64,000 nt of DNA, from NCBI GenBank assembly GCA_950097015.1, contig CATNEN010000035.1:1364001-1428000 (forward strand). Reading direction: 5' to 3'. Both the position numbers and the translations under genes were made by a program. Below are positions 1 to 41,590 of this stretch, in pieces. Source of the DNA: Macrostomum hystrix (Eukaryota > Animalia > Platyhelminthes). The stretch's first letter is position 1, and each line of letters opens with the position of its first letter. The notes beneath the pieces are model-generated. The model saw only the letters and a program-made list of their open reading frames with translations, was not told the origin of the DNA and made no database searches.

Positions 1-769
1 CTCTCTGATTGGTCAAGAATATAATCGATTGGCAACGACAAAAACCAAACGCTGCTCTCTGATTGGCCAATAATAGAATATTGACCAATTAAAAGTTTGT
101 TTATATATTTCTTAGAATACAAAGGAAAATTGTATAAATATACTTTTTTAGCTGATAGGAAGCCTTTTGGAAACTTTCCAGATGTCCTACTGTGTCATTG
201 CGCCCTGTTTTTATTGACCAAGTTTTCTGAAATCCTTGAATTTAATTTGAGGATTAAAAGCAGTTTTAAAATTTTCGGAGAGACTTCTTAACAGGGACCC
301 TGCACTCCGTGCTAACTGTACTAAAGGCTTCACTGTCTAATCAAGACTCACAGGCGGTCCACACATGTCTTCTTTTTTCGACATTTTTTTCTTTCGGTTT
401 AATCCGCTTCAGAAATTCATTTTTTTGCTTTAATTACTCGTAGTTGTGTGGGGACTTCGAGATGGATGCGGCTCGCGGAAATCTGATCCATTCTAATCCT
501 CAGATCTGACAAAGAAAATCTCGTGCGACTGCCGGCTGATGTTACTCTGAAAAAAGTTCTGTAGCAGCATGAACGACAAAGCTATTAAAAAAGTAAAAAA
601 CTACCTCATCATAAAGCCATTATTCATTCTTTGTGACAGATTTGCGAGCTAGGTGAAACACAAAGGCGAGTAATATATTGCAAATATATTATTTCAGAGA
701 AAATGCTAATTCCAGCACACTGGAAAATCTTACGATTGTTGAAGACTGGGATTTGGGATTCTCGAAGAG

Positions 770-3700
770 GCCATTGGGATAGAATTGGGATTCTTGAAGA
801 GGCCATAGGGAAAGAATTGGGATTCTTAAAGAGACCATAGGGATAGAATTGGGATTCTCGAAGAGGCCATAGGGATAGAATTGGGATTCTTAAAAAGACC
901 ATAGGGAAAGAATTGGGATTCTTAAAAAGACCATAGGGATAGAATTGGGATTCTTAAAGAGGCCATAGGGATAGAATTGGGATTCTTAAAAAGTCCATAG
1001 GGAAAGAATTGGGATTCTTAAGAAGACCATAGGGATAGAATTGGGATTCTTAAAAAGACCATAGGGAAAGAATTGGGATTCTTAAGAAGACCATAGGGAT
1101 AGAATTGGGATTCTTAAAAAGACCATAGGGATAGAATTGGGATTCTTAAAAAGACCATAGGGAAAGAATTGGGATTCTTAAAGAGGTCATAGGGAAAGAA
1201 TTGGGATTCTTAAAGAGACCATAGGGAAAGAATTGGGATTCTTAAAGAGGCCATAGGGAAAGAATTGGGATTCTTAAAAAGACCATAGGGAAAGAATTGG
1301 GATTCTTAAAGAGGTCATAGGGAAAGAATTGGGATTCTTAAAGAGACCATAGGGATAGAATTGGGATTCTTAAAGAGGCCATAGGGAAAGAATTGGGATT
1401 CTTAAAAAGACCATAGGGAAAGAATTGGGATTCTCGAAGAGGCCATAGGGAAAGAATTGGGATTCTCGAAGAGGCCATAGGGAAAGAATTGGGATTCTCG
1501 AAGAGACCATAGGGAAAGAATTGGGATTCTTAAAGAGGCCAAAGGGATAGAATTGTGATTCTTAAAAAGACCATAAGGAAAGAATTGGGATTCTTAAAAA
1601 GACCATAGGGATAGAATTGGGATTCCTAAAGACGCCATAGGGATAGAATTGGGATTCTTAAAGAGGCCAAAGGGATAGAATTGTGATTCTTAAAAAGACC
1701 ATAAGGAAAGAATTGGGATTCTTAAAAAGACCATAGGGATAGAATTGGGATTCTTAAAAAGACCATAGGGATAGAATTGGGATTCCTAAAGACGCCATAG
1801 GGATAGAATTGGGATTCTTAAAGAGGCCATAGGGAAAGAATTAGGATTCTTAAAAAGACCATAGGGAAAGAATTGGGATTCTTAAAGAGGCCATAGGGAT
1901 AGATTAGGGATTCTTCAAAAGACCATAGGGATAGAATTGGGATTCTTAAAGAGGCCATAGGGAAGGAATTGGGATTCTTAAAAAGACCATAGGGATAGAA
2001 TTGGGATTCTTAAAGAGGCCATAGGGATAGAATTGGGATTCTTAAAAAGACCATAGGGATAGAATTGGAATTCTTGAAGAGGCCATAGGGAAAGAATTGG
2101 GATTCTCGAAGAGGCCATAGGGATAGAATTGGGATTCTTTAAAAGACCATAGGGATAGAATTGGGATTCTTAAAGAGGCCATAGGGATAGAATTGGGATT
2201 CTTAAAGAGGCCATAGGGATAGAATTGGGATTCTTAAAAAGACCATAGGAAAAGAATTGGGATTCTCGAAGAGACCATAGGGAAAGAATTGGGATTCTTA
2301 AGAGGCCAAAGGGATAGAATTGTGATTCTTAAAAAGACCATAAGGAAAGAATTGGGATTCTTAAAAAGACCATCGGGAAAGAATTGGGATTCTTAAAGAG
2401 GCCATAGGGATAGAATTGGGATTCTTAAAAAGACCATAGGGAAAGAATTGGGATTCTCGAAGAGACCATAGGGAAAGAATTGGGATTCTTAAAGAGGCCA
2501 AAGGGATAGAATTGTGATTCTTAAAAAGACCATAAGGAAAGAATTGGGATTCTTAAAAAGACCATCGGGAAAGAATTGGGATTCCTAAAGATGCCATAGG
2601 GATAGAATTGGGATTCTTAAAGAGGCCGTAGGGAAAGAATTGGTATTCTTAAAGAGGCCATAGGGATAGAATTGGGATTCTTGAAGAGGCCATAGGGATA
2701 GAATTGGGATTCTTAAAAAGACCATCGGGAAAGAATTTGGATTCTTAAAAAGACCATAGGGATAGAATTGGAATTCTTGAAGAGGCCATAGGGATAGAAT
2801 TGGGATTCTTGAAGAGGCCATAGGGAAAGAATTGGGATTCTTAAAGAGGCCATAGGGAAGGAATTGGGATTCTTAAAAAGACCATAGGGATAGAATTGGG
2901 ATTCCTAAAGATGCCATAGGGATAGAATTGGGATTCTTAAAGAGGCCGTAGGGAAAGAATTGGGATTCTTAAAGAGGCCGTAGGGAAAGAATTGGTATTC
3001 TTAAAGAGGCCATAGGGATAGATTAGGGATTCTTAAAAAGACCATAGGGATAGAATTGGGATTCTTGAAGAGGCCATAGGGATAGAATTGGGATTCTTAA
3101 AAAGACCATCGGGAAAGAATTTGGATTCTTAAAAAGACCATAGGGATAGAATTGGAATTCTTGAAGAGGCCATAGGGATAGAATTGGGATTCTTGAAGAG
3201 GCCATAGGGAAAGAATTGGGATTCTTAAAGAGGCCATAGGGAAGGAATTGGGATTCTTAAAAAGACCATAGGGATAGAATTGGGATTCTTAAAGAGGCCA
3301 TAGGGATAGAATTGGGATTCTTAAAAAGACCATAGGGATAGAATTGGAATTCTTGAAGAGGCCATAGGGATAGAATTGGGATTCTTAAAAATACCATAGG
3401 GATAGAATTGGAATTCTTAAAGAGGCCATAGGGATAGAATTGGGATTCTTGAAGAGGCCATAGGGAAGGAATTGGGATTCTTAAAAATACCATAGGGATA
3501 GAATTGGGATTCTTAAAGAGGCCATAGGGAAAGAATTGGGATTCTTAAAAAGACCATAGTGATAAAATTGGGATTCTTAAAGAGGCCATAGGGATAGAAT
3601 TGGGATTCTTAAAGAGGCCATAGGGATAGAATTGGGATTCTTAAAGAGGCCATAGGGAAAGAATTGGGATTCTTAAAGAGGCCATAGGGATAGAATTGGG

Positions 3701-4535
3701 ATTCTTAAAGAGGCCATAGTGATAAAATTGGGATTCTTAAAGAGGCCATAGGGATAGAATTGGGATTCTTAAAGAGGCCATAGGGATAGAATTGGGATTC
3801 TTAAAGAGGCCATAGGGAAAGAATTGGGATTCTTAAAGAGGCCATAGGGATAGAATTGGGATTCTTAAAGAGGCCATAGGGAAAGAATTGGGATTCTTAA
3901 AGAGGCCATAGGGATAGAATTGGGATTCTTAAAGAGGCCATAGGGATAGAATTGGGATTCTTAAAGAGGCCATAGGGAAAGAATTGGGATTCTTAAAGAG
4001 GCCATAGGGATAGAATTGGGATTCTTAAAAAGACCATAGGGAAAGAATTGGGATTCTTAAAGAGGCCATAGGGATAGAATTGGGATTCTTAAAGAGGCCA
4101 TAGGGATAGAATTGGGATTCTTTAAAAGACCATAGGGAAAGAATTGGGATTCTTAAAAAGACCATAGGGAAAGAATTGGGATTCTTAAAGAGGCCATAGG
4201 GATAGAATTGGGATTCTTTAAAAGACCATAGGGAAAGAATTGGGATTCTTAAAAGACCATAGGGAAAGAATTGGGATTCTTAAAGAGGCCATAGGGATAG
4301 AATTGGGATTCTTTAAAAGACCATAGGGAAAGAATTGGGATTCTTAAAAAGACCATAGGGAAAGAATTGGGATTCTTAAAGAGGCCATAGGGATAGAATT
4401 GGGATTCTTTAAAAGACCATAGGGAAAGAATTGGGATTCTTAAAAAGACCATAGGGAAAGAATTGGGATTCTTAAAGAGGCCATAGGGATAGAATTGGGA
4501 TTCTTTAAAAGACCATAGGGATAAAATCGGGATTC
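770..4535. repeat. 32-bp minisatellite (GAATTGGGATTCTTAAAGAGGCCATAGGGATA), ~118 copies
   Basis: Directly visible tandem units; overlying ORFs repeat every 32 aa (3 units). Confidence 0.97.
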
Positions 4536-6010: not shown

Positions 6011-6750
6011 TCTCATAATCTCTTTTGCAGCCTCCTATTTGACTCAGTTTGGTCTAACCGTCTAATCTCAATAATTTATTCACGCTCAGCGCCTTCACGC
6101 TGTCACTCAATTTAGGCACAGCTACTACTAGAGGCAAAGCTAACAGTTGGTTGCTAAGTTGGCCAGCGCCTCAGGATTTGGTGAATTTCAGTCAAGCGGT
6201 TCTACCCTCTATCCTCACTATGCTCTCCATTTCCCTCGCAAGTGCCTTGGCTTAAAAGTCTTTACTAAAATAATTCTTACTTATTCTCGTAACCCATTTT
6301 ATCTAACTCCACCAGTTCGTCGCAACCTCCGCACAATAAGTGGCCAAGCATCGCTTAGATCACTTCCATTTAGTGAGCACAAAAGAGGACACAAGATGGC
6401 TCTCCTGTCCGGTATGCTATAAGTGCCCGTGCACTTGAGCTTGCCAACCTAATTGAGCGCCAAGAAGGCCGAATGCCACAAAACTCTGCGCAATTTCAAA
6501 AGTCAGCAACCGCTGGTTGACCTTCAAAAGTACACGGGGCGCACAATGCAGCCGAGGCAGTGCTCAGCTGATGAAGTTTAATTAATGAGGGGCTTGATAG
6601 CTTTGAGTTAGGAAATGAGAAACTGACTTCCACTTTGTGGAAAGCCTTTGAACATTTTGCTAAACGTTTCTCTCTAACTCAGGCTTAAACTAACAGGAAT
6701 CCAGAGAGAGGGAGATAGGGAGAGAGAGAGAGGGGGGAGAGAGGAGAGAG

Positions 6751-6939
6751 GACACTGCCCATTGAATTTCAAAAATCTAATGTTGGAATCGATTCCGATT
6801 TGTATCGAAAAAAATGAAATCAGGATTCGAACCAAGGCAACTCCAGACGCGTTTCGCTCTTATTGGAGCTCATCAGTAGAGTCTAGCCTAGCGCTCTAGC
6901 CATTAGGCTATAGGCGCTTGTTCAAATCCAGCTTTCAAT
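6751..6939 (-). mobile_element. Hammerhead-containing tRNA-promoter element (retrozyme/SINE-like), copy 1
   Basis: Minus strand: A-box TAGCCTAATGG (6910-6900), hammerhead (6883-6839), B-box GGTTCGAATCC (6833-6823), T7 run (6814-6808), then a CT-rich tail. A near-identical copy lies at 35863-36051. Confidence 0.85.
6839..6883 (-). ncRNA. Type I hammerhead ribozyme, copy 1
   Basis: Minus strand reads GACTCTA-CTGATGA-GCTC-CAATAA-GAGC-GAAAC-GC-GTC-TGGAGTT. It has the full core, a 4-bp helix II and a 7-bp helix I; predicted GUC cleavage is between 6846 and 6845. Confidence 0.92.
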
Positions 6940-7078
6940 CTCAACATATCGTAATCGATTCGGCAGCGCCCCGCAACTCAATCCATACTCACTCAACTCC
7001 GTGGCACTGACTCGGTCGTAGGAGACGCCGGTGCTGGCCTGAGAGAGAGGGAGAGAGAGAGCGGGAGAGAGGAGAGAG

Positions 7079-7125
7079 GACATTGCCCATCGAATTTCAA
7101 AAATCGAATGTTGGAATCGATTCCC
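7079..7125 (-). mobile_element. Truncated 3' fragment of the hammerhead element (adjacent monomer, 328-bp period)
   Basis: GACATTGCCCATCGAATTTCAAAAATCGAATGTTGGAATCGATTCC matches 6751-6796 with 3 substitutions. Confidence 0.85.
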
Positions 7126-7610: not shown

Positions 7611-8159
7611 CAGAGAGAGGGCTAGAGAGAGGAGAAAGGGGAGAGGGGGGTAAAGAGAGGGCTTGAGAGTGGAGAAAGGGGAGAAAGGGGTAGAGAGTGG
7701 CGGGAGGGAGGGGAGAGAAATAAAAAGGAAGTAGTGAGATAGGATAAATATTCGAAGGGAGATAAATATGGAAGGTGTCTTCCCTAAAGCCACAATGTCA
7801 GGGCTAAGCATTGAGCACACGCGCGGTGGCAATGATGCAACCAAGGCACCCACCCCAGTCCAGCCAGTTTCCTGACCATCTGATTTTGGGGTCCCGTGTG
7901 AAAATCATAAAATCTAAGAATATTCTGCAGCGGTCCAGATTTAAAATCTAAATTTTGGCAGTTTTTTACACCCAAATTTGGCAAACGAAACATGCCTATG
8001 GACTTCTCAGGGCAGGAATCTCGGGCTGAGTCACGTGGTTTTCTGCAGTAATAGAGTGAATTTAATTATGCGATCATGAAAACATGCACACACTGAGAGA
8101 GCTTTGCGGGCACAAGTTTATGTACGTGTAGGTTTAGAAATACTTTTCCCAAGGGGATC

Positions 8160-9345
8160 TCCTCCTCTCCTCTCATCTTCTCTCCTCTTCTCTCCTCTTG
8201 TCTCGTCTTCTCTCCTCTCCACTCCATTCCCCTCATCTCCTCTCCTCTTGTCTCGTCTCCTCTCCTTTCATCTCCTCTCATCTCTTCTCCTCTCCTCTCC
8301 TCTCCTCTCCTCTCCTCTCCTCTCCTCTCATCTCATCTCCTCTCCTCTCCTCTCCTCTCCTCTCCTCTCCTCTCCTCTCCTCTCCTCTCCTCTCCTCTCC
8401 TCTCCTCTCCTCTCCTCTCATCTTCTCTCTTCTTCTCTCCTCTTGTCTCGTCTTCTCTCCTCTCCTCTCTATTCCCCTCATCTCCTCTCCTTTTGTCTCG
8501 TCTCCTCTCCTCTCCTCTCCTCTCCTCTCCTCTCCTCTCTTCTCCTCTCTTCTCCTCTCCTCTCCTCTCCTCTCCTCTCCTCTCCTCTCCTCTCCTCTCC
8601 TCTCCTCTCCTCTCCTCTCCTCTCCTCTCCTCTCCTCTCCTCTCCTCTCCTCTCCTCTTCTCTCCTCTCCTCTCCTCTCCTCTCCTCTCCTCTCCTCTCC
8701 TCTCCTCTCCTCTCCTCTCCTCTTCTCTCATCTCCTCTCCTCTCCTCTTCTCTCATCTCCTCTCCTCTCCTCTTCTCTCATCTCCTCTCCTCTCATCTCC
8801 TCTCATCTCATCTCTTCTCTTCTCTCCTCTCCTCTCCTCTTCTCTCCTCTCCTCTCCTCTCATCTCCTCTTCTCTCCTCTCCTATCCTCTTCTTTCCTCT
8901 CCTCTCCTCTTCTCTCCTCTTCTCTCCTCTCCTCTCCTCTCTTCTCCTCTCCTCTCCTCTCCTCTCCTCTCCTCTCCTCTCCTCTCCTCTCCTCCCCTCT
9001 TCTCTCCTCTCCTCTCCTCTCCTCTCCTCTCCTCTCCTCTCCTCTCCTCTTCTCTCCTCTTCTCTCCTCTCCTCTCCTCTCCTCTCCTCTTCTCTCATCT
9101 CCTCTCCTCTCCTCTTCTCTCATCTCCTCTCCTCTCCTCTTCTCTCATCTCCTCTCCTCTCATCTCCTCTCATCTCATCTCTTCTCTTCTCTCCTCTCCT
9201 CTCCTCTTCTCTCCTCTCCTCTCCTCTCCTCTTCTCTCATCTCCTCTCCTCTCATCTCCTCTCATCTCATCTCTTCTCTTCTCTTCTCTCCTCGCCTCTT
9301 CTCTCCTCTCCTCTCCTCTCATCTCCTCTCCTCTCCTCTCCTGTC
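8160..9345. repeat. (CTCCT)n pentamer microsatellite
   Basis: Visible tandem CTCCT/CTCTT/CTCAT units. Confidence 0.97.
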
Positions 9346-10264
9346 GTCCCGTCCCCTTTTCTCTCACTTGCGATATGTGTCGAAAATGTTTTCTCGGTAC
9401 TAAAGACAACGGTTTATTTACGCTTTGCTTTTGAAATAGCGATGTTTTAGGTTCAATTTAGGTAATCATGGAAGATACAAAATATGTTCTGACAATATGT
9501 ACTTTTCACAACTTTACGCTTTGCTCCTGATCTCAGCTATACGCCAGCGATTCTGATGTGCTGGGGTCTGAGCAAGCCCATTCTTGAGACCCTTCCATTT
9601 TCCCATCTTTCCCTGCAGACAATGCCTGAAGCCTCTCCACGCCCTAACGGAAGGAAGAGAGTGGATTTAAAAAAGTTTTTTCATTTAACTACGCAAATCG
9701 CTTCTTCAATAGCAGATCCTCAGCAGAATTTGAGGCCCCATTTGGAACCAACAAAAATGCTGCCTTTTAGGACGCAGTCTGCAATGCGAACAGCGGCGGA
9801 TGCTTTTTTTTCTATTGGCAAACTTGACGAACTAAATAACCTAGTTCACTATTAAGGTGACGACTCATCAGACAACAACAAAAAAATAGATAGTTACTCG
9901 CGCTGTTTACTCGCAGCTTATTATTGCTTTGGTGAAAAAAACACAGTGTATTTATGTCCAGACACGAACTGAACACAAGCCAAGCCCAGGAGATGATAAG
10001 CGAAATCTTACAGTCGGGCGTGCAAATTAGTGAATGAAATTATGGCTGACGACAGCCGCTGTTCTCGTGCGGCACACTGTACTACTGAGTCCACTGCTCA
10101 CTCACAGTAAAGCTGATGAGAACTGAAAATGAGGACAGATAAGCTAAGAGACTGTGATGGCCGCGATGGGCAACCAGCCAAAGCAGAGGCGTCCAAGCTC
10201 AATTCCTCGCCGTCTCGCCGACTAAAAGGTATTTAGAGCCAAGATCGACACATCTCTCTGCTTT

Positions 10265-11945
10265 CATAGAATCTGCAGTAGATAAGACTCCAATCTGCAG
10301 TAGATAAGACTCCACTCTGCAGTAGATAAGACTCCACTCTGCAGTAGATAAGACTCCAATCTGCAGTAGATAAGACTCCAATCTGCAATACATAAGACTC
10401 CACTCTGCAGTAGATAAGACTCCAATCTGCAGTAGATAAGACTCCAATCTGCAGTAGATAAGACTCCAATCTGCAGTAGATAAGACTCCAATCTGCAGTA
10501 GATAAGACTCCAATCTGCAGTAGATAAGACTCCAATCTGCAGTAGATAAGACTCCAATCTGCTGTAGATAAGACTCCACTCTGCAGTAGATAAGACTCCA
10601 ATCTGCAGTAGATAAGACTCCAATCTGCAGTAGATAAGACTCCACTCTGCAGTAGATAAGACTCCAATCTGCAGTAGATAAGACTCCACTCTGCTGTAGA
10701 TAAGACTCCAATCTGCAGTAGATAAGACTCCACTCTGCAGTAGATAAGACTCCAATCTGCAGTAGATAAGACTCCACTCTGCTGTAGATAAGACTCCACT
10801 CTGCAGTAGATAAGACTCCAATCTGCAGTAGATAAGACTCCACTCTGCAGTAGATAAGACTCCACTCTGCAGTAGATAAGACTCCAATCTGCAGTAGATA
10901 AGACTCCAATCTGCAGTAGATAAGACTCCAATCTGCAGTAGATAAGACTCCAATCTGCTGTAGATAAGACTCCAATCTGCAGTAGATAAGACTCCACTCT
11001 GCAGTAGATAAGACTCCACTCTGCAGTAGATAAGACTCCAATCTGCAGTAGATAAGACTCCACTCTGCAGTAGATAAGACTCCACTCTGCAGTAGATAAG
11101 ACTCCAATCTGCAGTAGATAAGACTCCAATCTGCAATACATAAGACTCCACTCTGCAGTAGATAAGACTCCAATCTGCAGTAGATAAGACTCCAATCTGC
11201 AGTAGATAAGACTCCAATCTGCAGTAGATAAGACTCCAATCTGCAGTAGATAAGACTCCAATCTGCAGTAGATAAGACTCCAATCTGCAGTAGATAAGAC
11301 TCCAATCTGCTGTAGATAAGACTCCACTCTGCAGTAGATAAGACTCCAATCTGCAGTAGATAAGACTCCAATCTGCAGTAGATAAGACTCCACTCTGCAG
11401 TAGATAAGACTCCAATCTGCAGTAGATAAGACTCCACTCTGCTGTAGATAAGACTCCAATCTGCAGTAGATAAGACTCCACTCTGCAGTAGATAAGACTC
11501 CAATCTGCAGTAGATAAGACTCCACTCTGCTGTAGATAAGACTCCACTCTGCAGTAGATAAGACTCCAATCTGCAGTAGATAAGACTCCACTCTGCAGTA
11601 GATAAGACTCCACTCTGCAGTAGATAAGACTCCAATCTGCAGTAGATAAGACTCCAATCTGCAGTAGATAAGACTCCAATCTGCAGTAGATAAGACTCCA
11701 ATCTGCTGTAGATAAGACTCCACTCTGCAGTAGATAAGACTCCAATCTGCAGTAGATAAGACTCCAATCTGCAGTAGATAAGACTCCAATCTGCAGTAGA
11801 TAAGACTTCAATCTGCAGTAGATAAGACTCCAATCTGCAGTAGATAAGACTCCAATCTGCTGTAGATAAGACTCCAATCTGCAGTAGATAAGACTCTACT
11901 CTGCAGTAGATAAGACTCCAATCTGCAGTAGATAAGACTCCAATC
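10265..11945. repeat. 22-bp minisatellite (TCCAATCTGCAGTAGATAAGAC), ~76 copies
   Basis: Visible tandem units with CCAATC/CCACTC variants. Confidence 0.97.
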
Positions 11946-12857
11946 TTTGCTGCGGTAATCAATCCAGATTTTTTCGGTAGTTTAACTTCCGCACCAAAAC
12001 AAAAACTACGATGCGGTTAAAAAAATCATCCGATTCCTACAGACCAAAGGAAACTTGTGGATAATGAAATCAGACTTCCATCCCCTTCTTCCCCTTCCGT
12101 TAGCAATAAAATAACCTTTTTTCATAGATCTTTCTGTCTAGAGTTGCGATTGAGCCAGAAGTTCATCGCTGCGGGTTCATTGCAAAGGAATATCGAGAGC
12201 CATTTTCCTGTCGATTTGCATAAATTGAGCAGCCATTCAATCCGCCAAGCTATGAATTATGAGCTTCAATTCTCAGATTCTGCTTTTGTAGAAGCAGAAG
12301 TTAAAGATCTAATTAACTCTTTGCGCGCCAGTTTCTCTGTGCCAGGCAAAAGTAAGCAGTTTTCATTCCATACACTGGCCAGTCTTGTCTTGTGCTCAGG
12401 GACAGAGCGGGTTGGTTGTGGCACAGTTGTCTTCCGCCTGGATGGAACTTCTGGCTCGCCGCCTCCGCAATCTAGTGCTGCTCTACTGGGCCCAGTTTGC
12501 GGTTGGCAAGCAATCACGGCAGACTTCACTGCACTTTCACCAGCCAAGAGGTTAGAGGCAAACACACTTCAACCTCGGCCAGATCAGAACTTCTCCGGGG
12601 GAAAGGGGAGGCTTTGCTTCCCCCCCCCCCGATTAGTAAAAATGAAGCTGAATAACTGACGGACCAACTGATCGATTCGAGAGCTCAATAAGCAGTCTCG
12701 CTATGTTGTGTATTTCGGATTTTTTCAGGACAAGACAGTGCCATTTCTGCCCTATAATCTGCGTCAGCAAAAGTACAAAGTAGGTCAAACAAAGATTATA
12801 CTTCAGGCGCAGATGGCGGCTTGTCTGTCCCAGCAGTTGCACTCTGCCTAATTAGCT

Positions 12858-13426
12858 TCACTTGGTCTCGGCTGACATTCTCTGCGCACCGAACGGGTCC
12901 TCGCAGTTTCGACTACGAGAGACAGTTCTTGAAGCACCAGCGTGTCCGGCGGCGGCAGCGGCGGCGGCGGCGGCAGCGGCTGCGGCTTTGCTACTGCAGC
13001 TGCTGCCACCGCCGCCACCGCCGCCGCCTCCGCCGCCGCCGCCTCCTCCACCGGGCACTCTGTCTGCTGGTGTCCGCAGCTGCAGTCGATAGGCCGGCGC
13101 GTCGCCGCCGCCGACGTCCCTTACGGGAGAGTTCCGGGCACCACGGCGATGACAGACGACGACGCAACGGCTGCCACGGCTGCTTCGGCAGGCCTGCATC
13201 ATGGTGCTGCGGAATGCCCGACGAAACTTCAACGACATCAGGTTGTAGAGAATCGGATTGACGATGGACGAGCCAAAGAATAGCAAGCCGGAGATGTGGA
13301 ACAGGTTCTGGTTGATCCAGGTAGCCACGCAGGATTGGCAGTATGCGTCCTTGGATACCACATCGGCCAGGATGCGGGACAGGTGAAATGGCGCGTAGCA
13401 GATGAAGAAGGCCAGAACAATGCCGA
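12858..13426 (-). CDS. Neuropeptide GPCR (NMU/PRXamide-receptor-like), exon 3/3: TM6-TM7 and Gly/Ala-rich tail
   Basis: Acceptor cccacag|TC at 13426 (phase 1). Encodes VGIVLAFFICYAPFHLSR...NPILYNLMSLKFRRAF; stop at 12858. Confidence 0.9.
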
Positions 13427-14525
13427 CTGTGGGCGAGAGTGAGAGCGGAGTGGCGAGAAAAATGCAAAAAAAGCAAAACACGTACCTCCGCATTGTGGTT
13501 AAGGACAGACCGGGCCGTTGTGACGGAAGTAACAGCGAAGGAATTCAGGACCGACTCTAGGAATCTACTTGCCCCCTCTCCGCTATTCAGTTTCACCTCG
13601 TCCCCGCCTTGGTTAAAACGCAGCCATTTTTTCTAGTTCATCAGCTTCTGTCAGGTCAGACCGACGGTTGGGAACTAAATGTCCCGAAAGAATCCCCAAG
13701 TACCGCCACACGCGATTCTCCACCGTTCGTCTCCTGTGTGCCATCCTCTCCTCCTACTGCCGCCTCCTCCGTGCAATCCGAACTCTCCCTTATTAACAGG
13801 GAACGAGAAAGGAATGATGGAACATCAAGATTGAAGGCAAAATATACGTCTTGGCTTCTATTCCAGACAGACTAGTGCTTCGCCCTGTTGCTGATTTCGC
13901 CCGCTTGTTCCAGTGAAAGGTATCAAGAAAAAAGAGCAAAAAGGCTCCTATTTAGAGTGGGCAGGCATTCTAATGGAAATGGCAACATGAGAGTGTGTTT
14001 TGATGAGAAGACAGCCTTATCTTTATCTGGCTTTGAGGGCTTGATTTGGAGTATACGTTTTCTAGGAATCAGATGGCTTCCACGTCACCCACCCGCATCC
14101 TCCGATGCTTAACCTGGCGATGGCCGTCTTTCGTCACCCTGCCCCGCAATCCGTTCATCCCCACGAGGCTGTGCAGTGTGCTCTGGTGTTTCTCGTCTAC
14201 CAAGCCACTCTGCCAGGACTGCTTCCCAGGCTAGCAGGATTTGCTGTGAGAGAAAATAATCAACGATTTTTTCTACTGATTTCTTCTAGAAGTATATGAC
14301 GAATGTTCGGTTCCCGCTCAGCCTGCGTCTTGAATTGCAGCTATTTGTTTTGCTGGTGGAGGCATTTCAGCGACAACTTACTCCTGTTTGAGTCCGATCT
14401 TGAGTACACTCACTTTAACACGCCGTCAAGATTAATCTATAGGTAAGCAATGCAGCAATCCAGCGTTTGGTCTCTGGACAGGCTTCGATTGTTGGCAATC
14501 ATTAATTTGACTGGAAAGAACTTAC

Positions 14526-14820: not shown

Positions 14821-15481
14821 CTGAATGAGATTATTGCATATTAAAATTTTGTATTTGGTCTAATGTTATTTTAGTATTGTTGGGTTCCAATAAGAGTACA
14901 GTTGAATTTTCGCTGATACTCCTAAGTGGTGGCAGCGATGGGATAATACGAGCGTAGCCATAACTCTATTGTGCTGCGAGAATTCCTTATCTTACTTTCA
15001 TTTCATTTACTGTCTCAGCTAAGTATGTCGTACATTACGAAGTGCTAAAAGTCTAGTGGTTTGTCAATTGTCAAAAAGAAACCTTTTTTTCTTACTAAAC
15101 TAAGCCTCCCTCTTTCTGCATCCCGCCTGTTCTTGCGAGGGACGCTCGCTCACCCAGTAGCGAAATGTAGAGAACGGTTTTTTTCTATTTCTAAATTATT
15201 AACCAACTGGTTGGGAATGGCATAAGAAAAAACGCTTGTCAGATGTCTATCAGAATGCTGTTATATTGGAAGCATACAGGGTAAATAATTCTGCAATATA
15301 ACACTGACTATACTTAAATTGATGGTTCCACAGAATCCATTCTTTAATAGACAGAGTTTGGCAGTTGAAACATGTACCGTTTAAAGTCTAATGACTTCTC
15401 AGCTCTGCTTCTTAAGTTTGATTTTATGACGGGGCCAAAATAGGATAGTTTTAAACGTGATTCAGAGACGAAACAAATCAC

Positions 15482-16012
15482 CTCAAATCCAAGCTGCGAG
15501 CTCATGACAGCCGACAGGCAGGCCGACGCCACCCAGATGCCGGCGATGATCTTCACTGGCCTGGACAGACCGCGACCTCGACGCACCTTCATCGGATGGC
15601 AGATAGCCAAGTAGCGCTCGGCAGTCAGAGCAGTGACTGTCAGCGTGGAACAATAGGTGCACATCTCAGCAAGGAAACCGGAGCCGACGCAGATGATGAG
15701 GCTGTCAGGAAACGGGTACCGGTGCCAATGTGTCAGCAGCTCGTAGGGCAGCCGAGAGACCAGCACGACCAAATCTGAGACACTCAAGTTGAACAGATAG
15801 CAGTTTGTCGCCGTCCGCATGAACTGGGTGCGCGCGATCACCAGACAGGTGATCAAATTGCCGAAGCAGCCCAGGGCAAAGATGACAGCCAGTGCGCCAG
15901 TCAGGGCGGCAAGCTGAGGCGGTGTGTAGGTAGCCGGTAGGCCCCACTGCTGCTCGATGCACTCCTTATCCGTTGCATTCTCATCGCAGGAGCACGATTG
16001 ATAAGAAATCAT
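15482..16012 (-). CDS. Neuropeptide GPCR, exon 1/3: TM1-TM4
   Basis: Motifs GNLITCLVI, MRTATNCYLFNLSVSDL and TALTAERYLAICHP match the class A NMU/capa/pyrokinin receptor type; donor GAG|gtgatt. The ATG at 16012 is assumed and an upstream exon is possible. Confidence 0.88.
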
Positions 16013-16744
16013 TAGACACTCAGCTGCCGATACCACAATCTAAGACACTGAATTGCAAGGGAAAAGCTATCCACTGCGTCACTCACAAGCACAATGCGCC
16101 TTCTCACACAAATCGTCTCTTTTTAGCCCTTTTTCGCGGAGATGCGTTGAGGTCCATTTTGATTCCCTTCAGTTCTGACAGCCAATGAGGAAGGCCAGGG
16201 AGCAGAGGATGGGGAGAAAGTGGGATAAAAGGGAGGGGGAATTCATGGTAAAAGCGCCACGGCCAGCTGGACCCCAGTTCGCCAAAAAAAATCTGGGTTC
16301 GGAAATATTTTCAAATATCCGCTCACTTTTCCTTGCTTGAGCATGCATTATTTTTCACTCTGCTATACTCCGCTTTCTCTTTCAGGCTTCAGTGAGCTGA
16401 GACTGCTGCTATGTAAAAAGGGCCTAAGGAGAAGGGGTGCTGCGGAGAAAATTCTGCATTGTCCAGCTGGACCTCCACTTCATCGTTTCTTAATGTTCCC
16501 TCCTGCGCAGCTCACTTAATCTCCCATCTTCTCTCGAGACCTCGTCCCTCTAGTCGAGCGGATGCAAGTTACAAGACTCATTACTCAACTATCCAGATCA
16601 ACCCGATAATTTTACGCTAGTCATTATAACAATAATACCGTAGCCGAACTTTTTCGCTTTGTAGTGACGTTTTGCCTCAGTGCCTCATATTATGTGTCCG
16701 TGTCTCTGGTGTCTTGACTTCAGTCTCTGATGTTTTGTCATCAA

Positions 16745-19330: not shown

Positions 19331-20039
19331 GGTAGTGTACTATCAATAATCTACATTGTGTATCTGATGGGCTGTCTAAGAAAGTTATAAAATTGATCAA
19401 CTTTCACAAATATTCTTGCCTTGGGGTTGGCAAACTTTATGCCCCAAATTCATTTTTCCCGGCCGACGTTTAAACCGAAGCACATTCCCCCTTTAAAGAG
19501 GCCTGGTGCGTCTTGACAACGATTCGCCATAAGCTTCGAAAATTGGCCCTCACTTTCAGCCTCCCTTCAGCCGTATTCCCTGACACTAAAGCAACCCCAA
19601 AACCCGGTCTCTCAGCACATCTCATCAACTGCTGCAACCTGTTAACAAAACTGTTCCCTAGGGAGATCGCCGCCGATCGTTCAGTCGGTCTCGGATCCTT
19701 CTTAAGGAAGTTTCTCAGCTGTCTCTAGTTTTTCATTAAACTAGGAGAGAGCAGATGGCCCAGCTGCTGGCCCGACTTTTTTGGTCCATAGATTGGGCGC
19801 AGTTGAATCTCTCTGTCTCTCATCTGCTTCCTAAATCTCGGAGTCGAGCTGCGGCAGTTAATCACGCCGAACCTTTCCCTGCGCCTCATTGCTCATCATT
19901 GTGTGAGCAGCACTGCTCAAACAACTACTGAACTGCTGAGCACTAATGTTGGGAAGTCAAGTTGAGGGTAGGTAAAACAATTGAAAGCTTGAAAAGCAAC
20001 TTCAGTTTACACATTTCTAATTTGTTGGCAACGGTGGTA

Positions 20040-20905
20040 GAGTAGAGTAGGCACTGAGATTCTCGAAAGTAGTCAAGGTAGAGTAGGCACTGAGATTCTC
20101 GAAAGTAGTCAAGGTAGAGTAGACACTGAGATTATCAGAAGTAGTCAAGGTAGAGTAGGCACTGAGATTATCAGAAGTAGTCAAGGTAGAGTAGGCACTG
20201 AGATTATCAGAAGTAGTCAAGGTAGAGTAGGCACTGAGATTCTCGGAAGTAGTCAAGGTAGAGTAGGCACTGAGATTCTCGGAAGTAGTCAAGGTAGAGT
20301 AGGCACTGAGATTATCAGAAGTAGTCAAGGTAGAGTAGGCACTGAGATTCTCGGAAGTAGTCAAGGTAGAGTAGGCACTGAGATTCTCGGAAGTAGTCAA
20401 GGTAGAGTAGGCACTGAGATTATCAGAAGCAGTCAAGGTAGAGTAGGCACTGAGATTATCAGAAGTAGTCAAGGTAGAGTAGGCACTGAGATTCTCGGAA
20501 GTAGTCAAGGTAGAGTAGGCACTGAGATTATCAGAAGCAGTCAAGGTAGAGTAGGCACTGAGATTATCAGAAGCAGTCAAGGTAGAGTAGGCACTGAGAT
20601 TATCAGAAGTAGTCAAGGTAGAGTAGGCACTGAGATTCTCGGAAGTAGTCAAGGTAGAGTAGGCACTGAGATTCTCGGAAGTAGTCAAGGTAGAGTAGGC
20701 ACTGAGATTATCAGAAGTAGTCAAGGTAGAGTAGACACTGAGATTCTCGGAAGTAGTCAAGGTAGAGTAGGCACTGAGATTCTCGGAAGTAGTCAAGGTA
20801 GAGTAGGCACTGAGATTATCAGAAGTAGTCAAGGTAGAGTAGGCACTGAGATTCTCGGAAGTAGTCAAGGTAGAGTAGGCACTGAGATTATCAGAAGTAG
20901 TCAAA
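20040..20905. repeat. 36-bp minisatellite (GTAGTCAAGGTAGAGTAGGCACTGAGATTCTCGGAA), ~24 copies
   Basis: Visible tandem units in two variants, ATTCTCGGAA and ATTATCAGAA. Confidence 0.96.
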
Positions 20906-22019
20906 CCTGAGATAATAGCTCTACAATGGAGGAAACACGAGTGCTATAGTCAGTTAGGAAGGAACAATTGCTCCTCTTGTGAGGCATACCAGGCTATGAA
21001 AAATTGGCATTTTTTCTGTAGCTGATTGTCTAGCAGCAAACTGCGCTGGTCAGCTGTTTTTTTCTGGCTTTTTTAACTCACAGACAGGACTGATTGTGGA
21101 CTGGAGCCGGTGGAATTCTAATCAACTAGGAATTATAGCAATGTGACAGTCAACTAGGGGCAATGGGCAGACTTTTTTTAGAGGAAAAAAACACAGTCTC
21201 CCATCAGTGCTAGGAGATTAATTTATTATTAATTAGGCCAAGTTGGAGCGGTAAATTCAACAGTGGCTGGTTTGGGGTGGGTGAAAGTCAGGGGGAGTAG
21301 AGGAGAGGAGAGGAGAGACGCTCATTTTTATTTCCTATAAAAAAACGATTGAAATCGCGCAGCCAACTTCTGTTGCGAATTACAAAATTTCCGTGCGATA
21401 GAAAAATAATTATTGAAATTTCAGCACACGAAGTCGACAAGTCTGAATTCTTGAACACACGGCCACTCACCGCGCACTCCAACTGCAGTCTTACCAGTGG
21501 TCCAAGCCGACACGAGCCTCTTTTAGTTTGCCAACCAACCCGAAAGCGGCTAGCTCGACTCGAAGGCAAAACAGACAAGAAAAAGAGAACGAGAGGAAAT
21601 AGAGAAAGCACGATTCTTGCTAGCCGGGAAGCCAACTCAAAGCCACACAAGAAGAAATTCAAAAGAAGAATAAACTATTTTTTTCTGAATCTTCAAGCAA
21701 TCAACCATGTTAAAGAGATCTACTCGGCTTCTGTGGCTACAGCTGGTCGTTCTGTCAGCTGTCTACTTTCCAAGCATAGCAATCAATGCCGGTAAGTCGC
21801 AAATGTTTGATGGCAGTGAATAGTCAAAAGACCCTCAGGTCGAGCCTTTGAATTCCTGAGCCAACTGACTGATATCCACTCTCTGTTTGATTTTTTATCG
21901 ATTGATGATTCCGGCTTTGTCCGTGCAGTTGATTCTCTCTGGTGTATTTTTTACCGCAGGCTAGAGAAACTCGTCCAGCACCTGACCTCACATTCAAAAA
22001 CAGAATCAATTAAGAGATC

Positions 22020-23745: not shown

Positions 23746-24559
23746 GAGGGGTACAGAAGGAGGAGATTGTCTCCTTATATCTAGACTGTCACACTGCTGC
23801 TAAATTTCTAGCTGTTCTACTCTGTAGCTTGTAAAACAGCCCTTTTCCATAAGCGAGATCATTTGTGCTTTCGGCTCATGAGTCTGAATTAACCAGAGCA
23901 GAGCATTTATAGATCTGCAAATGATAATATTTGGCATTGATATTTCTAGGAAAACGAATGAGCAAAATTGACCGTCTATAAAACTCGCTACTTCCTACCA
24001 TCCGCTTCTGCATATATTAAAATATTTGCTCATCTTGTTTGTTGAAAACTATTTTTTCTAGCAAAAACTTCTGCGGAATTGCTTAGTGTAGACTTGGGAG
24101 AAGCAGATTTCCTCTATGAGACTGCCAAATAGGATTTCCCAGAACATTTCCTGCCTTCCCACACTGCCTTGTGTTTAACTTTCCTTTCGGTTTCAAAGTT
24201 GGGCCAAAGCCAGATGCCACCTGTTACTGTTCCCCACACAAAAAACTGCGCTGAGTCTGTCCCGTGTTTTTGGGAGGTCACTTCCCCCAGTCCTCTTCCA
24301 GTTCGTTTATTCCCCATCCTCTATTCCCATTACCTGTAACGGCTGCATCGATACTGAAGCACAGAAAGCACACAGCTTCACGCCGAGAACTCAGACAAGA
24401 AAAATCTGAGTAGGCGTTAGCAAGGAAGAGCTGTTGAAATTCTCTGCCTTTCTTACTATGAAAGTAGGTGGCTAAGTGTCCGATAATAAGCTTTCATTTT
24501 GTGTGCAACACCTCCGCTCACCATTACACTTCTTATATTAACTCACCTACCTGTAACTC

Positions 24560-25140: not shown

Positions 25141-25599
25141 CGCTCTCAAAAGCTTTTCGAATTGATCTTAAAAATTGCACAGTGCAGTATAACAAGTGAC
25201 AACTGAGATTTTGAAAATACATTCTTGCTAACATGAGCAGGCTCTATAGGTCCTAAGCTTGACCCAAATGCACTAAGGAATTTCTCTATAGAAAAGCTGT
25301 CAATCGATGCCAATGAATCTTTCAATTTCATCTGTTGCTCCTCAATTTCGAGTAGAGATTTGCCAATCGATATTTTTTTCATTTAACTCTCTCGCACAAT
25401 GCGATAGTCGATAAAACAGGCAGACATTTGGATGTGACTAAGTTAGGCGTCTAAAAAAGTTCAATCAACTATCAGGGACAGCTAAAACCCTTTAGTGTTA
25501 GTTGCTTCAGTGGTTTAATTGCCCCAGTAAATTATTTTATGATAAAGTATACTTCAAAAAAAACAAAATTAACACTACGAGCTATTAAGGAGTGGTAAG

Positions 25600-33569: not shown

Positions 33570-33599
33570 GTGAGTGCCAAAGCACTTTTAGGGCATGGT

Positions 33600-35862: not shown

Positions 35863-36051
35863 GACACTGCCCATTGAATTTCAAAAATCTAATGTTGGAA
35901 TCGATTCCGATATGTATCGAAAAAATTGAAATCAGGATTCGAACCAAGGCAACTCCAGACGCGTTTCGCTCTTTTTGGAGCTCATCAGTAGAGTCTAGCC
36001 TAGCGCTCTAGCCATTAGGCTTTAGGCGCTTGTTCAAATCCAGCTTTCAAT
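35863..36051 (-). mobile_element. Hammerhead-containing tRNA-promoter element, copy 2 (intron 5 of the ZP gene, antisense)
   Basis: Colinear with 6751-6939 (offset 29112) with only a few substitutions. Confidence 0.85.
35951..35995 (-). ncRNA. Type I hammerhead ribozyme, copy 2
   Basis: GACTCTA-CTGATGA-GCTC-CAAAAA-GAGC-GAAAC-GC-GTC-TGGAGTT; differs from copy 1 only in loop II. Predicted cleavage is between 35958 and 35957. Confidence 0.92.
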
Positions 36052-37089
36052 TTCAAAAATTGAAGAGGCGAGAGGAAGAGGGAGAGGAAGAGGGAGAGGA
36101 AGAGGGAGAGGAAGAGGGAGAGGAAGAGGGAGAGGAAGAGGGGAGAGGAAGAGGGGAGAGGAAGAGGGGAGAGGAGAGCTTGCACGCACAAATTCTTTGT
36201 CAGCAGGCATATCTTTTAATTGTGTCTGAGTTGATAATTTATAATGTCAGACTTATGCCACACCGAATCAGGTTATTGTTTGCCCTTTGCACTTTGAGTT
36301 GGAGGCTGTTGTGAGCGGATGGATTCTGCGCCGACAATTTATTAAATTCAGATGGATCCTGAAAAAATGATTTAGGCTACACCAGACTTCAGGGGTTCGC
36401 TCGGAGTCTAAAAACTTGCTCAAGCAGGGTCTTGGACTCCAGTAGCTGGAAGAAATGTGCTCAAATGTGTGTGCTCCGCCAGCAATTCCCCTAGCTCTCG
36501 GAAACTTTTTGCCCCCCATTGTTCCAGGCAAGGCGTCAGAGCTGTAGGCGAAGGGGGGTCGCTAAAAGCTGAAGTGGCCCTCGTAAGCCTTGCAATTCTA
36601 AGGTGGATATTAGAAATTCATCGATTTTAATTTTCTCCAGGCCAATGCAGAACGATCAGATCTGCTAGGGGCAGAAATTAAACAAGTGAAAAGCTCAACC
36701 TAAAGACACTGCGGAAAAATTTGGCCACTGAAAGAAGCTGGATCATTGTGAGATGAAAGATTGACAGCTGAGTGACAGATGAGAGTGGAGATCAAGCCAG
36801 TACTGATTTTAGCTTCTCTTAGAGAGAGACAGTGAGGGCCTACTCAACACGCTGCCGCTCTGCTGATGTTGATGTATGCTATTCAGCCAGTGATTAACAA
36901 GTGCTCTCGATCATACCATAATAGCCCACAGAGCATAAGATCTGCGTCCTAAATTATCATCGGCTCTGAGAAAGTGTAGGAAATATTTTTGCATTTATTT
37001 TAAAGCCATGTTAATTGTTTTATAGTTGCTTTGAAACACCGCATTGCAGCACTAATTCTCAAGAATAGCAATTTATGATCAAAACACAA

Positions 37090-41558: not shown

Positions 41559-41590
<32 letters not shown>

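What the first reader, a model, noticed from the sequence alone, without database searches (positions are those of the whole stretch)
6808..6917. Hammerhead ribozyme embedded between the A- and B-boxes of a tRNA-like Pol III unit
Seen (minus strand): GCGCCTA-TAGCCTAATGG (A-box)-CTAGAGCG-CTAGGC-TA-GACTCTA-[CTGATGA GCTC CAATAA GAGC GAAAC GC GTC]-TGGAGTT-GCCTT-GGTTCGAATCC (B-box)-TGATTTCA-TTTTTTT. Helix I extends past a UA bulge (AGGC/GCCU), so the ribozyme sits where a tRNA anticodon arm would be. Established: CUGANGA/GAAA/NUH is the hammerhead core; A-box, B-box and oligo-T form a type 2 Pol III unit; hammerhead cleavage leaves 2',3'-cyclic phosphate and 5'-OH ends, the ends RtcB ligates. Schistosome Sm-alpha also combines a tRNA-like promoter with a hammerhead, but as I recall its ribozyme lies downstream of an intact tRNA-like head. 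Inference: a ~110-nt Pol III RNA that cuts itself into ~72 and ~36 nt pieces, separating its own promoter halves. It could be a new retrozyme/SINE architecture whose promoter is restored only by ligation, circularisation or tandem copies.
Basis: partly seen in the sequence, partly recalled or inferred. Interest (0 to 1): 0.93.

Follow-up and report, generated by a model that had tools for sequence, protein, structure and literature searches.

The report
Hammerhead ribozyme inside tRNA-derived repeat
A self-cutting RNA motif (hammerhead ribozyme) really does sit between the two promoter boxes of a decayed tRNA gene here, but it is the core of a very abundant ~328-bp mobile repeat of a known general kind (retrozyme / Sm-alpha-like element), not a stand-alone small RNA gene.

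Summary
On the minus strand, 6917-6808 holds an A box, a complete type I hammerhead, a perfect B box and a T7 run. Rfam's HH9 model gives the only credible RNA matches in the window, below its gathering score. A 97% identical second copy lies at 36056-35864.

- **Size of the unit:** it is the centre of a ~328-bp element (7041-6714). Its word depth in a probable DNA run (kind guessed by the tool) is in the thousands.
- **Copies:** three copies here share one 3' end and differ at the 5' end. A full copy follows a truncated one, and they sit in CT microsatellite. This is the Penelope-like insertion style.
- **T run and B box:** the T run is internal to the mobilised unit. The B box and T run pair with sequence upstream of the proposed start in a 176-nt hairpin (z -6.2).
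- **Helix III:** it is the palindrome ACGCGU, the dimer-type metazoan hammerhead.
- **AGGC/GCCU extension:** it covaries in coral and other hammerheads, so it belongs to the ribozyme, not to a tRNA anticodon stem.
- **tRNA fold:** no cloverleaf is detectable.

The A box-ribozyme-B box order differs from Sm-alpha, and I found no paper describing it. I file it as a new variant of a known kind. Pol III transcription is plausible but unshown. First readers of this scan noted the same architecture at three other places in this genome.

The parts
6714..7041 (-). Full-length copy of the ~328-bp repeat (copy A). It comprises a 5' region, the hairpin cassette, a tail and a CT-rich 3' end. CT repeat continues to about 6703.
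   Evidence: blastn of the element against the window; 328-bp direct-repeat spacing; alignment with copy B; word depth of 3,000-47,000 in run X1.
7042..7124 (-). 5'-truncated upstream copy (last ~45 nt of the body plus the CT-rich end), abutting the full copy head-to-tail.
   Evidence: Direct repeat D3, 62 nt, 95% identical, spacing 328; blastn match of element positions 246-290 to 7124-7080.
6786..6961 (-). 176-nt imperfect hairpin cassette with the hammerhead at its tip and the D-arm-like hairpin as a side branch.
   Evidence: Inverted repeat I1, 18 nt, 89% complementary. Folds: -69.5 kcal/mol, z -6.2 on the minus strand; -59.1 kcal/mol, z -4.5 on the plus strand.
6890..6917 (-). tRNA-derived 5' piece (acceptor-like 7 nt plus a D-arm-like region) containing the A box at 6910-6900.
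   Evidence: Sequence; A/B box co-occurrence 1 observed against 0.005 expected. The D-arm resemblance rests on my knowledge of tRNA consensus; no cloverleaf was found.
6835..6889 (-). Type I hammerhead module: closing stem (A)GGC/GCC(U), UA bulge, 7-bp helix I, core, 4-bp helix II with loop CAAUAA, and palindromic helix III ACGCGU. Predicted cut between 6846 and 6845.
   Evidence: cmscan HH9 38.7 bits; covariation of helix I and the closing stem across 10 hammerheads.
6823..6833 (-). B box GGTTCGAATCC, an 11/11 match to consensus. In the hairpin fold it pairs with GGATTTGAAC at 6929-6920.
6808..6814 (-). T7 run (T6 in the family majority). It looks like a Pol III terminator, is internal to the repeat, and pairs with 6945-6936 in the fold.
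   Evidence: (variant at 6814).
35864..36056 (-). Copy B: 5'-truncated copy (element positions 98-290, 97.4% identical) inside a CT-rich minisatellite. Hammerhead 36001-35947, B box 35945-35935, T6 35925-35920. The first base of its A box is mutated T to A.
   Evidence: HH9 40.1 bits; A-box pattern not matched.

Best explanation
The finding is the core of a very high-copy, ~328-bp, non-coding retroelement of the hammerhead-bearing class. That class includes the metazoan non-LTR retrozymes and the schistosome Sm-alpha-like SINEs.

**Anatomy.** A canonical invertebrate type I hammerhead module replaces the anticodon arm, variable loop and 5' T-stem of a tRNA-derived segment. The A box therefore lies upstream of the ribozyme, and the B box and an oligo-T run lie downstream. 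The whole is embedded in a 176-nt hairpin within a highly self-paired 328-nt unit.

**Shown here.**
- The motif, its statistical significance and its high copy number.
- The element's boundaries.
- Copies with a shared 3' end and different 5' ends.
- The partial-tandem arrangement in CT microsatellite.
- The stable fold.
- The dimer-type helix III.

**Inferred.**
- The element is transcribed as RNA that runs through the T run. This could be host read-through, Pol II, or leaky Pol III.
- Two hammerhead copies, from adjacent units or two molecules, pair through the ACGCGU palindrome and cut after GUC. [quoted passage not shown]
- Unit-length RNA may be circularised by RtcB, as shown for other animal retrozymes.
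- New copies are made by a Penelope-like or LINE reverse transcriptase from uncut or religated RNA.
- The intact A and B boxes are either a working internal Pol III promoter that makes a separate short (~110 nt) ribozyme-bearing RNA, or a recent inheritance from a tRNA-SINE ancestor. I put Pol III activity at about 1 in 3.
For: **The hammerhead is real.**
- HH9 matches are the only credible RNA-family matches in 64 kb.
- The core pattern occurs twice against 0.03 expected.
- Helix I and the closing stem covary across coral and other invertebrate hammerheads. Seven of 10 pairs show compensatory changes, and 92.5% of cells are paired against 20-46% in slid controls.

**It matches the canonical metazoan form.** Helix lengths and the palindromic helix III fit the description in PMC4209133.

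**It is a high-copy family.** 49 contigs were laid, with summed word depth of 3,000-47,000 in X1, a probable DNA run of organism A (kind guessed by the tool). A 332-nt contig in X2 spans the whole stretch.

**Element limits and copy pattern.** define these. A full copy preceded by a truncated copy, and insertion in microsatellite, fit the Penelope-like insertion features described in bioRxiv 10.1101/2021.04.23.441226.

**The fold is stable.**
- The circular 328-nt fold is -110.5 kcal/mol, 68% paired, z -3.5, and 13.6 kcal/mol better than the opposite polarity.
- The hairpin cassette has z -6.2.

**It fits the retrozyme description.** Type I hammerhead, 150-450-bp repeats, GC below 50%, highly self-paired RNA, and co-occurrence with Penelope-like elements (PMC7229834).

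**The boxes are beyond chance**.
Against: - Only a 1.25-mer tandem is seen here, not a long array.
- No circular junction was seen. Only assembled contigs were available, and they cannot show one.
- No cleavage, transcript ends or polymerase were tested.
- GC is 49%, at the edge of the retrozyme description.
- The contigs from runs labelled as probable RNA are not proof of transcription; the tool warns that DNA can be present.
- In X10, a probable RNA run, one contig ends exactly at the last T of the T run (6808). This would fit Pol III termination and so favours the rival. However, the same contig starts 47 nt upstream of the tRNA-like +1, and a contig in another run crosses the T run.
- Penelope-like elements in this genome are known to me only from unchecked first-reader notes.
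Confidence: 0.62

Rival explanations
1. The 110-nt stretch is an autonomous type 2 Pol III gene. TFIIIC binds the A and B boxes, Pol III starts near 6922-6928 and stops in the T run. The ~110-nt RNA cuts itself into ~72 and ~38 nt pieces. The promoter halves are reunited only in ligated, circular or tandem forms.
For: - The A and B boxes are perfect, 66 nt apart, and followed by T6-7 a few nt after the tRNA-like 3' end. One such pair is seen against 0.005 expected.
- The boxes are intact although the cloverleaf pairing is lost, as in SINE heads under promoter selection.
- The 157-nt contig of X10, a probable RNA run, ends exactly at the last T, 6808.
- The segment 6822-6861 (the 3' half of the ribozyme plus the B box) has 3-4 times the word depth of its neighbours. 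It is therefore the part most widely shared among copies.
Against: - The mobilised unit includes 125 nt upstream and ~95 nt downstream of this stretch, across the T run.
- The B box and T run are paired with upstream sequence that such a transcript would mostly lack.
- The 110-nt RNA alone folds no better than shuffles.
- The dimer-type helix III makes cis cleavage of a lone monomer inefficient (PMC4209133).
- The X10 contig starts 47 nt upstream of +1, and an X9 contig crosses the T run.
- Copy B has lost the first A-box base.
Confidence: 0.22
2. A foldback or MITE-like DNA transposon. The 176-nt cassette with ~18-45-bp imperfect terminal inverted repeats is the mobile unit, and the ribozyme and boxes are passengers.
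For: Inverted repeats at 6786-6803 and 6944-6961, plus inner complementary arms. A first-reader note elsewhere in the genome describes the cassette 'inside 18-bp inverted repeats'.
Against: - Copy B lacks the outer 5' arm yet shares the downstream tail. All three copies share a 3' end well outside the cassette.
- I saw no target-site duplication at the cassette ends; this was an inspection by eye only.
- The minus-strand RNA fold is about 10 kcal/mol better than the plus-strand fold, owing to G-U pairs. This is a weak pointer to structure at the RNA level.
Confidence: 0.05
3. An intron-containing tRNA gene or pseudogene whose intron happens to be a hammerhead, processed like tRNA introns (TSEN cleavage and RtcB ligation, as for tricRNAs).
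For: The insert sits roughly where tRNA introns lie. The boxes and terminator are present.
Against: - There is no acceptor stem, and the T stem has 2-3 pairs by inspection.
- ARAGORN with introns allowed finds nothing consistent, and nothing after deleting the ribozyme.
- The Rfam tRNA model gives no hit.
- The unit is part of a repeat with thousands of copies.
Confidence: 0.03

Closest known systems
Metazoan non-LTR retrozymes (Cervera & de la Pena 2020, PMC7229834)
   Same: - Canonical type I hammerhead. The 26-nt core, helix II and loop 2 are identical to hammerheads on 36 metagenome contigs, whose source organisms are not given by the tools.
- The same GC-UA-7-bp helix I layout.
- A repeat unit within 150-450 bp.
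- No ORF, LTR, PBS or PPT seen.
- A highly self-paired predicted circle.
- High copy number.
   Different: - The ribozyme is flanked by tRNA-type A and B boxes and an oligo-T run. A 2020 review states that retrozymes seem to have no promoters (PMC7761336).
- None of the 36 hammerheads fetched from metagenomes has the boxes.
- Only a partial tandem is seen here.
- Circular RNA is not shown.
Sm-alpha / Sj-alpha SINE-like elements of schistosomes (Ferbeyre 1998, known to me only through the reviews cited here)
   Same: - About 330-bp, high-copy, tRNA-related element with Pol III boxes and a type I hammerhead with a minimal helix III.
- Tandem and dispersed copies.
   Different: - In Sm-alpha a complete tRNA-Gln-like head (A box, anticodon arm, B box) lies upstream of the ribozyme (PMC6765202; PMC2770079; monomer sequence). 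Here the ribozyme replaces the anticodon arm and splits the boxes.
- Here the tRNA-like part starts at position 125 of the element, not at its 5' end.
- The helix II and loop 2 sequence differs from Sm-alpha.
Amniote HH9 and amphibian/newt satellite hammerheads (Rfam RF02275)
   Same: Best Rfam model. Helix II/loop 2 is the same as the HH9 consensus in copy B and one base off in copy A. The internal loop of helix I lies in the same place.
   Different: - HH9 has a stable helix III and is a single conserved intronic locus.
- This one scores below the gathering cut-off because helix III is cut down to a palindrome.
Penelope-like elements with hammerheads in their terminal repeats (PMC4209133; bioRxiv 10.1101/2021.04.23.441226)
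   Same: - Insertion style: 5' truncation, a full copy preceded by a truncated copy, and microsatellite targets.
- Dimer-type hammerhead logic.
- They are the likely source of the reverse transcriptase.
   Different: - There is no ORF here.
- The ribozyme is the canonical form with loops, not the minimal Penelope form.
Pr77/L1TcRz of Trypanosoma cruzi L1Tc (PMC3383444, title and abstract only) and engineered tRNA-scaffold or Tornado constructs (from my own knowledge)
   Same: One short stretch serves both as an internal promoter (as DNA) and as a self-cleaving ribozyme (as RNA). Engineered tRNA scaffolds insert RNA at the anticodon position under Pol III.
   Different: The ribozyme class (HDV-like) and promoter type differ. 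The engineered systems are artificial. Dual function here is unproven.

Membership tests
Hammerhead ribozyme, type I (Rfam clan CL00010) | Conserved core CUGANGA ... GAAA ... UH cleavage triplet in the right order | tested here: met
   CTGATGA, GAAAC and GTC read directly; the pattern occurs twice against 0.03 expected.
Hammerhead ribozyme, type I (Rfam clan CL00010) | Helices I and II flanking the core, with the open end in helix I; support from covariation | tested here: met
   Helix II is 4 bp with G10.1-C11.1. Helix I is 7 bp plus a 3-4-bp closing stem. Seven of 10 helix I pairs covary across 10 sequences.
Hammerhead ribozyme, type I (Rfam clan CL00010) | Score at or above the Rfam gathering threshold | tested here: not met
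   38.7 and 40.1 bits against 52 for HH9. The shortfall comes from the missing helix III. E is about 1e-6 for the whole window.
Hammerhead ribozyme, type I (Rfam clan CL00010) | Stable helix III in the monomer | tested here: not met
   Only A-U and C-G around a 2-nt 'loop'. ACGCGU is a palindrome, the dimer-type described in PMC4209133.
Hammerhead ribozyme, type I (Rfam clan CL00010) | Mg2+-dependent self-cleavage | not testable with these tools
   Needs in vitro transcription of monomer and dimer constructs.
Metazoan non-LTR retrozyme | Type I hammerhead inside short (150-450 bp) tandem repeats present in many copies | tested here: inconclusive
   328-bp period, but only a 1.25-mer here. Very high word depth in X1. 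Array sizes elsewhere are unknown.
Metazoan non-LTR retrozyme | Non-coding, no LTR/PBS/PPT, GC below 50%, highly self-paired unit-length RNA | tested here: met
   No ORF above 53 aa within the element. GC is 49.4%, the circular fold is 68% paired, z -3.5.
Metazoan non-LTR retrozyme | Expressed as linear and circular RNA of unit length | not testable with these tools
   Only assembled contigs were available and no joints were reported. This shows neither presence nor absence.
Type 2 RNA polymerase III unit (tRNA-type) | A box, B box at a tolerated distance, and an oligo-T terminator on the sense strand | tested here: met
   TAGCCTAATGG, then 66 nt, then GGTTCGAATCC, then 8 nt, then T7.
Type 2 RNA polymerase III unit (tRNA-type) | Transcription by Pol III from these boxes | not testable with these tools
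   One contig end at the T run is suggestive only.
tRNA gene / tRNA-like structure | Cloverleaf with acceptor, D, anticodon and T arms | tested here: not met
   ARAGORN finds nothing, with introns or with the ribozyme removed. No Rfam tRNA match at E up to 10. The acceptor strands are not complementary by inspection.
Sm-alpha-type tRNA-derived SINE | Complete tRNA-like promoter head at the 5' end of the element, with the hammerhead downstream of it | tested here: not met
   The head starts at element position 125 and the ribozyme lies between the boxes. Sm-alpha layout from PMC6765202 and the monomer.

The most novel reading that the evidence does not exclude
The element is a retrozyme that carries its own Pol III promoter wrapped around its ribozyme. 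TFIIIC and Pol III would make a tRNA-scaffolded hammerhead RNA. Because the cut falls between the A and B boxes, only RNA that stays uncut or is religated by RtcB (linear or circular) can seed promoter-competent daughter copies. In that case RNA ligation, not just reverse transcription, decides which copies remain active. Alternatively, the short Pol III RNA is the trans partner that completes the dimeric ribozyme on long transcripts.
Probability: 0.17. Interest if true: 0.8.

Novelty: new variant of a known kind. Interest (0 to 1): 0.5.

Why it matters
How animal retrozymes are transcribed is an open point. The field's own review says they seem to lack promoters and depend on read-through (PMC7761336).

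This family offers a concrete, testable candidate for an internal promoter, because a canonical retrozyme-type hammerhead is framed by perfect tRNA-type A and B boxes and a terminator. It is also a natural counterpart of engineered tRNA-scaffolded ribozymes. It shows that the hammerhead module has been grafted into a tRNA-derived element in a different way from Sm-alpha.

If the boxes prove inactive, it is simply one more abundant retrozyme/SINE family with an unusual origin.

Tried and rejected
- **Rfam at gathering threshold:** nothing. The match appears only at the E-value threshold.
- **ARAGORN:** run plain, with introns, with lowered thresholds, and on four ribozyme-deleted constructs. 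No consistent tRNA was found. The low-threshold calls differed between the two copies, so I treated them as noise.
- **Collection scans:**
  - The hammerhead core in viral contigs gave 0 hits.
  - In metagenome contigs it gave 36 loci, all other hammerhead families, with no member of this family and no boxes.
  - The ribozyme/B-box junction in prokaryotic genomes and in viral contigs gave 0 hits.
  - I therefore could not obtain further copies of the family for a conservation test.
- **tRNA genes in the fetched loci, to trace the tRNA ancestor:** none found. My guesses at an ancestor (Ala/Lys-like D arm, Ser/Leu-like) come from memory only and were dropped.
- **Organism identification through a protein-atlas search of an N4BP1-like ORF:** uninformative. 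Run names are coded, so the species stays unknown. It is an animal, judged from GPCR and N4BP1-like exons.
- **RNAcofold of two units:** it did not recover the expected helix III duplex and was not used as evidence.
- **G-U against A-C asymmetry between strands:** real but small, so only a weak pointer to selection at the RNA level.
- **Short ORFs over the element as handles to fetch more copies:** too short to be useful.
- **Ferbeyre 1998 and two hammerhead surveys:** not held in the library.

Full report

- The hammerhead core CTGATGA lies at 6876-6870.
- It is followed by a 4-bp helix II (GCTC/GAGC) with loop CAATAA, then GAAAC, two bases, and GTC. The predicted cut lies between 6846 and 6845.
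- Upstream is TAGCCTAATGG (A box, 6910-6900).
- Downstream are GGTTCGAATCC (B box, 6833-6823) and a T7 run (6814-6808).

At its gathering thresholds Rfam reports nothing in the window. With E-value reporting, the Hammerhead_HH9 model matches here at 38.7 bits and at a second site at 40.1 bits. These are the only credible RNA-family matches in 64 kb (E about 1e-6 for the whole window). The gathering score of 52 is missed because helix III is almost absent.

The core pattern occurs twice against 0.03 expected. An A box followed within 25-100 nt by a B box occurs once in the window on both strands, against 0.005 in simulated sequence. The motif combination is therefore real and not chance.

**2. 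What surrounds it.**

A second copy lies at 36056-35864 on the same strand. It is 97.4% identical over 193 nt.

blastn of the region against the window defines an element that begins at 7041 and runs to a conserved CT-rich end near 6714.
- Copy B corresponds to element positions 98-290.
- A third fragment at 7124-7080 corresponds to positions 246-290. Together with its own CT-rich end, it abuts the full copy head-to-tail (direct repeat of 62 nt, 95% identical, spacing 328).

So three copies share one 3' end and have three different 5' ends. A full copy is preceded by a truncated one. Both loci lie in CT/GA-rich simple repeats. Craig et al. list exactly this pattern for insertions made by Penelope-like elements: strong 5' truncation, partial tandems and microsatellite bias (bioRxiv 10.1101/2021.04.23.441226).

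Laying public contigs on 6752-7042 gave these results.
- In X1, a probable DNA run of the same organism (kind guessed by the tool), 49 contigs were laid with summed word depths of 3,000-47,000.
- In another run, a 332-nt contig spans the whole stretch.
- Two further runs, of related organisms and labelled as probable RNA, hold the element at about 99% and 90% identity.

The family is thus very abundant. Only two positions differ from the window in 10% or more of the depth, and both match copy B. One of them turns T7 into T6.

**3. The unit is part of a larger structure.**

The 110-nt stretch alone folds no better than shuffled sequence (z -1.05). Extending it changes this.
- The 157 nt from 6964 to 6808 give z -3.9.
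- The 187 nt from 6966 to 6780 give -69.5 kcal/mol, z -6.2.

In that fold the B box pairs with GGATTTGAAC at 6929-6920. The T run pairs with a purine-rich stretch near 6940. An 18-nt inverted repeat (6786-6803 with 6944-6961) closes the stem. The hammerhead sits at the tip, and the D-arm-like hairpin is a side branch.

The opposite strand folds about 10 kcal/mol less well, partly because of G-U pairs. This is only a weak pointer.

A 328-nt unit folded as a circle is 68% paired. It gives -110.5 kcal/mol, z -3.5, and is 13.6 kcal/mol better than the other polarity. This is the 'highly self-paired' look described for retrozyme RNAs (PMC7229834).

**4. The ribozyme itself.**

A scan of metagenome contigs for the 26-nt core plus helix II returned 36 loci.

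I aligned this window's two copies with eight of these from three other families. All share the layout: a 3-bp GC-rich closing stem, a UA bulge, 6-7 bp of helix I, then the core.

Counting pairs on that alignment gave these figures.
- 92.5% of cells are paired, against 20-46% when partners are slid.
- 7 of the 10 helix I and closing-stem pairs show changes on both sides.
- The outermost closing-stem pair (alignment columns 4 and 60) appears as G-C, C-G or U-A.

Helix III is A-U and C-G around two bases, and ACGCGU is a palindrome. Cervera and de la Pena describe this as the canonical metazoan type I form. It is unstable as a monomer and active when two copies form a double hammerhead (PMC4209133). 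The amphibian retrozyme ribozymes behave this way (PMC7229834, abstract).

**5. How tRNA-like is it?**

The 28 nt upstream of the module (6917-6890) resemble an acceptor strand plus a D arm; that resemblance rests on my knowledge of tRNA consensus. The B box is a perfect T-loop match. Nothing else of a tRNA survives.
- The acceptor strands are not complementary.
- The T stem has 2-3 pairs.
- ARAGORN finds no tRNA with introns allowed or after removing the ribozyme.
- The Rfam tRNA model gives no match at E up to 10.

This is the state typical of SINE heads, with the boxes kept and the fold lost. But here the head starts 125 nt inside the element.

**6. Mechanism.**

Shown:
- the motifs and their significance;
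- the element's limits and abundance;
- the insertion pattern;
- the predicted folds;
- the dimer-type helix III.

Inferred:
- The RNA that gives rise to new copies spans both sides of the cut site and runs through the T run. It is therefore not a Pol III transcript ending there, and it is uncut or religated when copied.
- Cutting needs two ribozyme copies.
- The ends would be 5'-OH and 2',3'-cyclic phosphate (established hammerhead chemistry). RtcB could join them, as shown in vitro for axolotl and mussel retrozymes (PMC7229834).
- A Penelope-like or LINE enzyme does the copying.

Whether the boxes drive Pol III is open.
- For it: their perfection, their spacing, the terminator, a contig from a probable RNA run that ends exactly at the last T, and a 3-4-fold depth peak over the 3' half of the ribozyme plus the B box.
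- Against it: the points in sections 2 and 3, the same contig starting 47 nt upstream of the tRNA-like +1, another contig crossing the T run, and copy B having lost the first A-box base.

I give Pol III activity about one chance in three.

**7. Comparison with what is known.**

The closest kinds are the metazoan non-LTR retrozymes and the schistosome Sm-alpha/Sj-alpha elements.

Against Sm-alpha:
- A review states that the promoter is followed by the ribozyme, and that cleaved monomers carry the promoter only at their 3' end (PMC6765202).
- Sm-alpha copies are called complete tRNA-Gln(TTG) genes by tRNAscan-SE (PMC2770079).
- An Sm-alpha-like monomer printed in a supplement of PMC8490949 shows, by my reading, a B-box-like motif about 45 nt upstream of the ribozyme.
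- Here the ribozyme splits the boxes.

Against retrozymes:
- The field's review says they seem to have no promoters (PMC7761336).
- None of the 36 other hammerheads fetched has the boxes.

Seven full-text searches and several papers read found no description of a natural hammerhead between A and B boxes. This is not proof of absence. Ferbeyre 1998 and two surveys were not available, and repeat databases could not be consulted.

**8. Verdict.**

This is a new variant of a known kind: a retrozyme/Sm-alpha-like repeat whose hammerhead has been grafted into a tRNA remnant between the promoter boxes.

Interest is moderate. It offers a testable candidate for a retrozyme promoter, but the evidence here leans towards the boxes not being the engine of mobilisation.

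First readers of this scan noted the same architecture at three other places in this genome, and also noted the 328-bp repeat and the second copy in this window. I confirmed the two window-level notes and the inverted repeats. I did not check the notes from other places.

Noticed in passing
window 6822-6861: In run X1 the summed word depth over the 3' half of the ribozyme plus the B box is 3-4 times that of the rest of the element (33,000-47,000 against about 10,000). Contigs diverge just upstream, at 6853, 6854 and 6860. One of them continues as a snap-back-like palindrome around the GCGTCTGG segment. A second, more abundant family may share this 40-nt piece.
   Followed up: partly
window 6780-6795, 6946-6961, 7108-7123: A 16-nt motif (ATGTTGGAATCGATTC and a variant) recurs every 162-166 bp. 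The first ~40 nt after it are similar in both halves. The 328-bp unit may therefore be an old, diverged dimer of a ~164-bp unit.
   Followed up: partly
window 12858-13493 and 15344-16036, minus strand: Two ORFs match the rhodopsin-family 7TM receptor profile. They cover the C-terminal and N-terminal halves, so they are probably two exons of one GPCR gene about 6 kb from copy A.
   Followed up: no
window 62045-63157, minus strand: An ORF with a match to the N4BP1 UBA-like domain (E 2.5e-26), embedded in low-complexity sequence.
   Followed up: no
window 1-4000, 8000-12000, 20000-28000, 32000-36000, 56000-60000: Long purine/pyrimidine-skewed simple repeats (GC skew up to +/-0.49) fill much of the window and create many spurious long ORFs in all frames. 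Both copies of the element sit at or in such arrays.
   Followed up: partly
L032:150-315, L028:617-825, L007:1714-5872: Some metagenome contigs carry two hammerheads. Two have them in opposite orientation about 120-150 nt apart (L032, L028), and one has them in the same orientation about 4.1 kb apart (L007). The last resembles the flanking repeats of a Penelope-like element.
   Followed up: no
window 36012-36022: Copy B has A instead of T at the first A-box position. The family majority keeps T, as no variant was reported at the matching place.
   Followed up: yes
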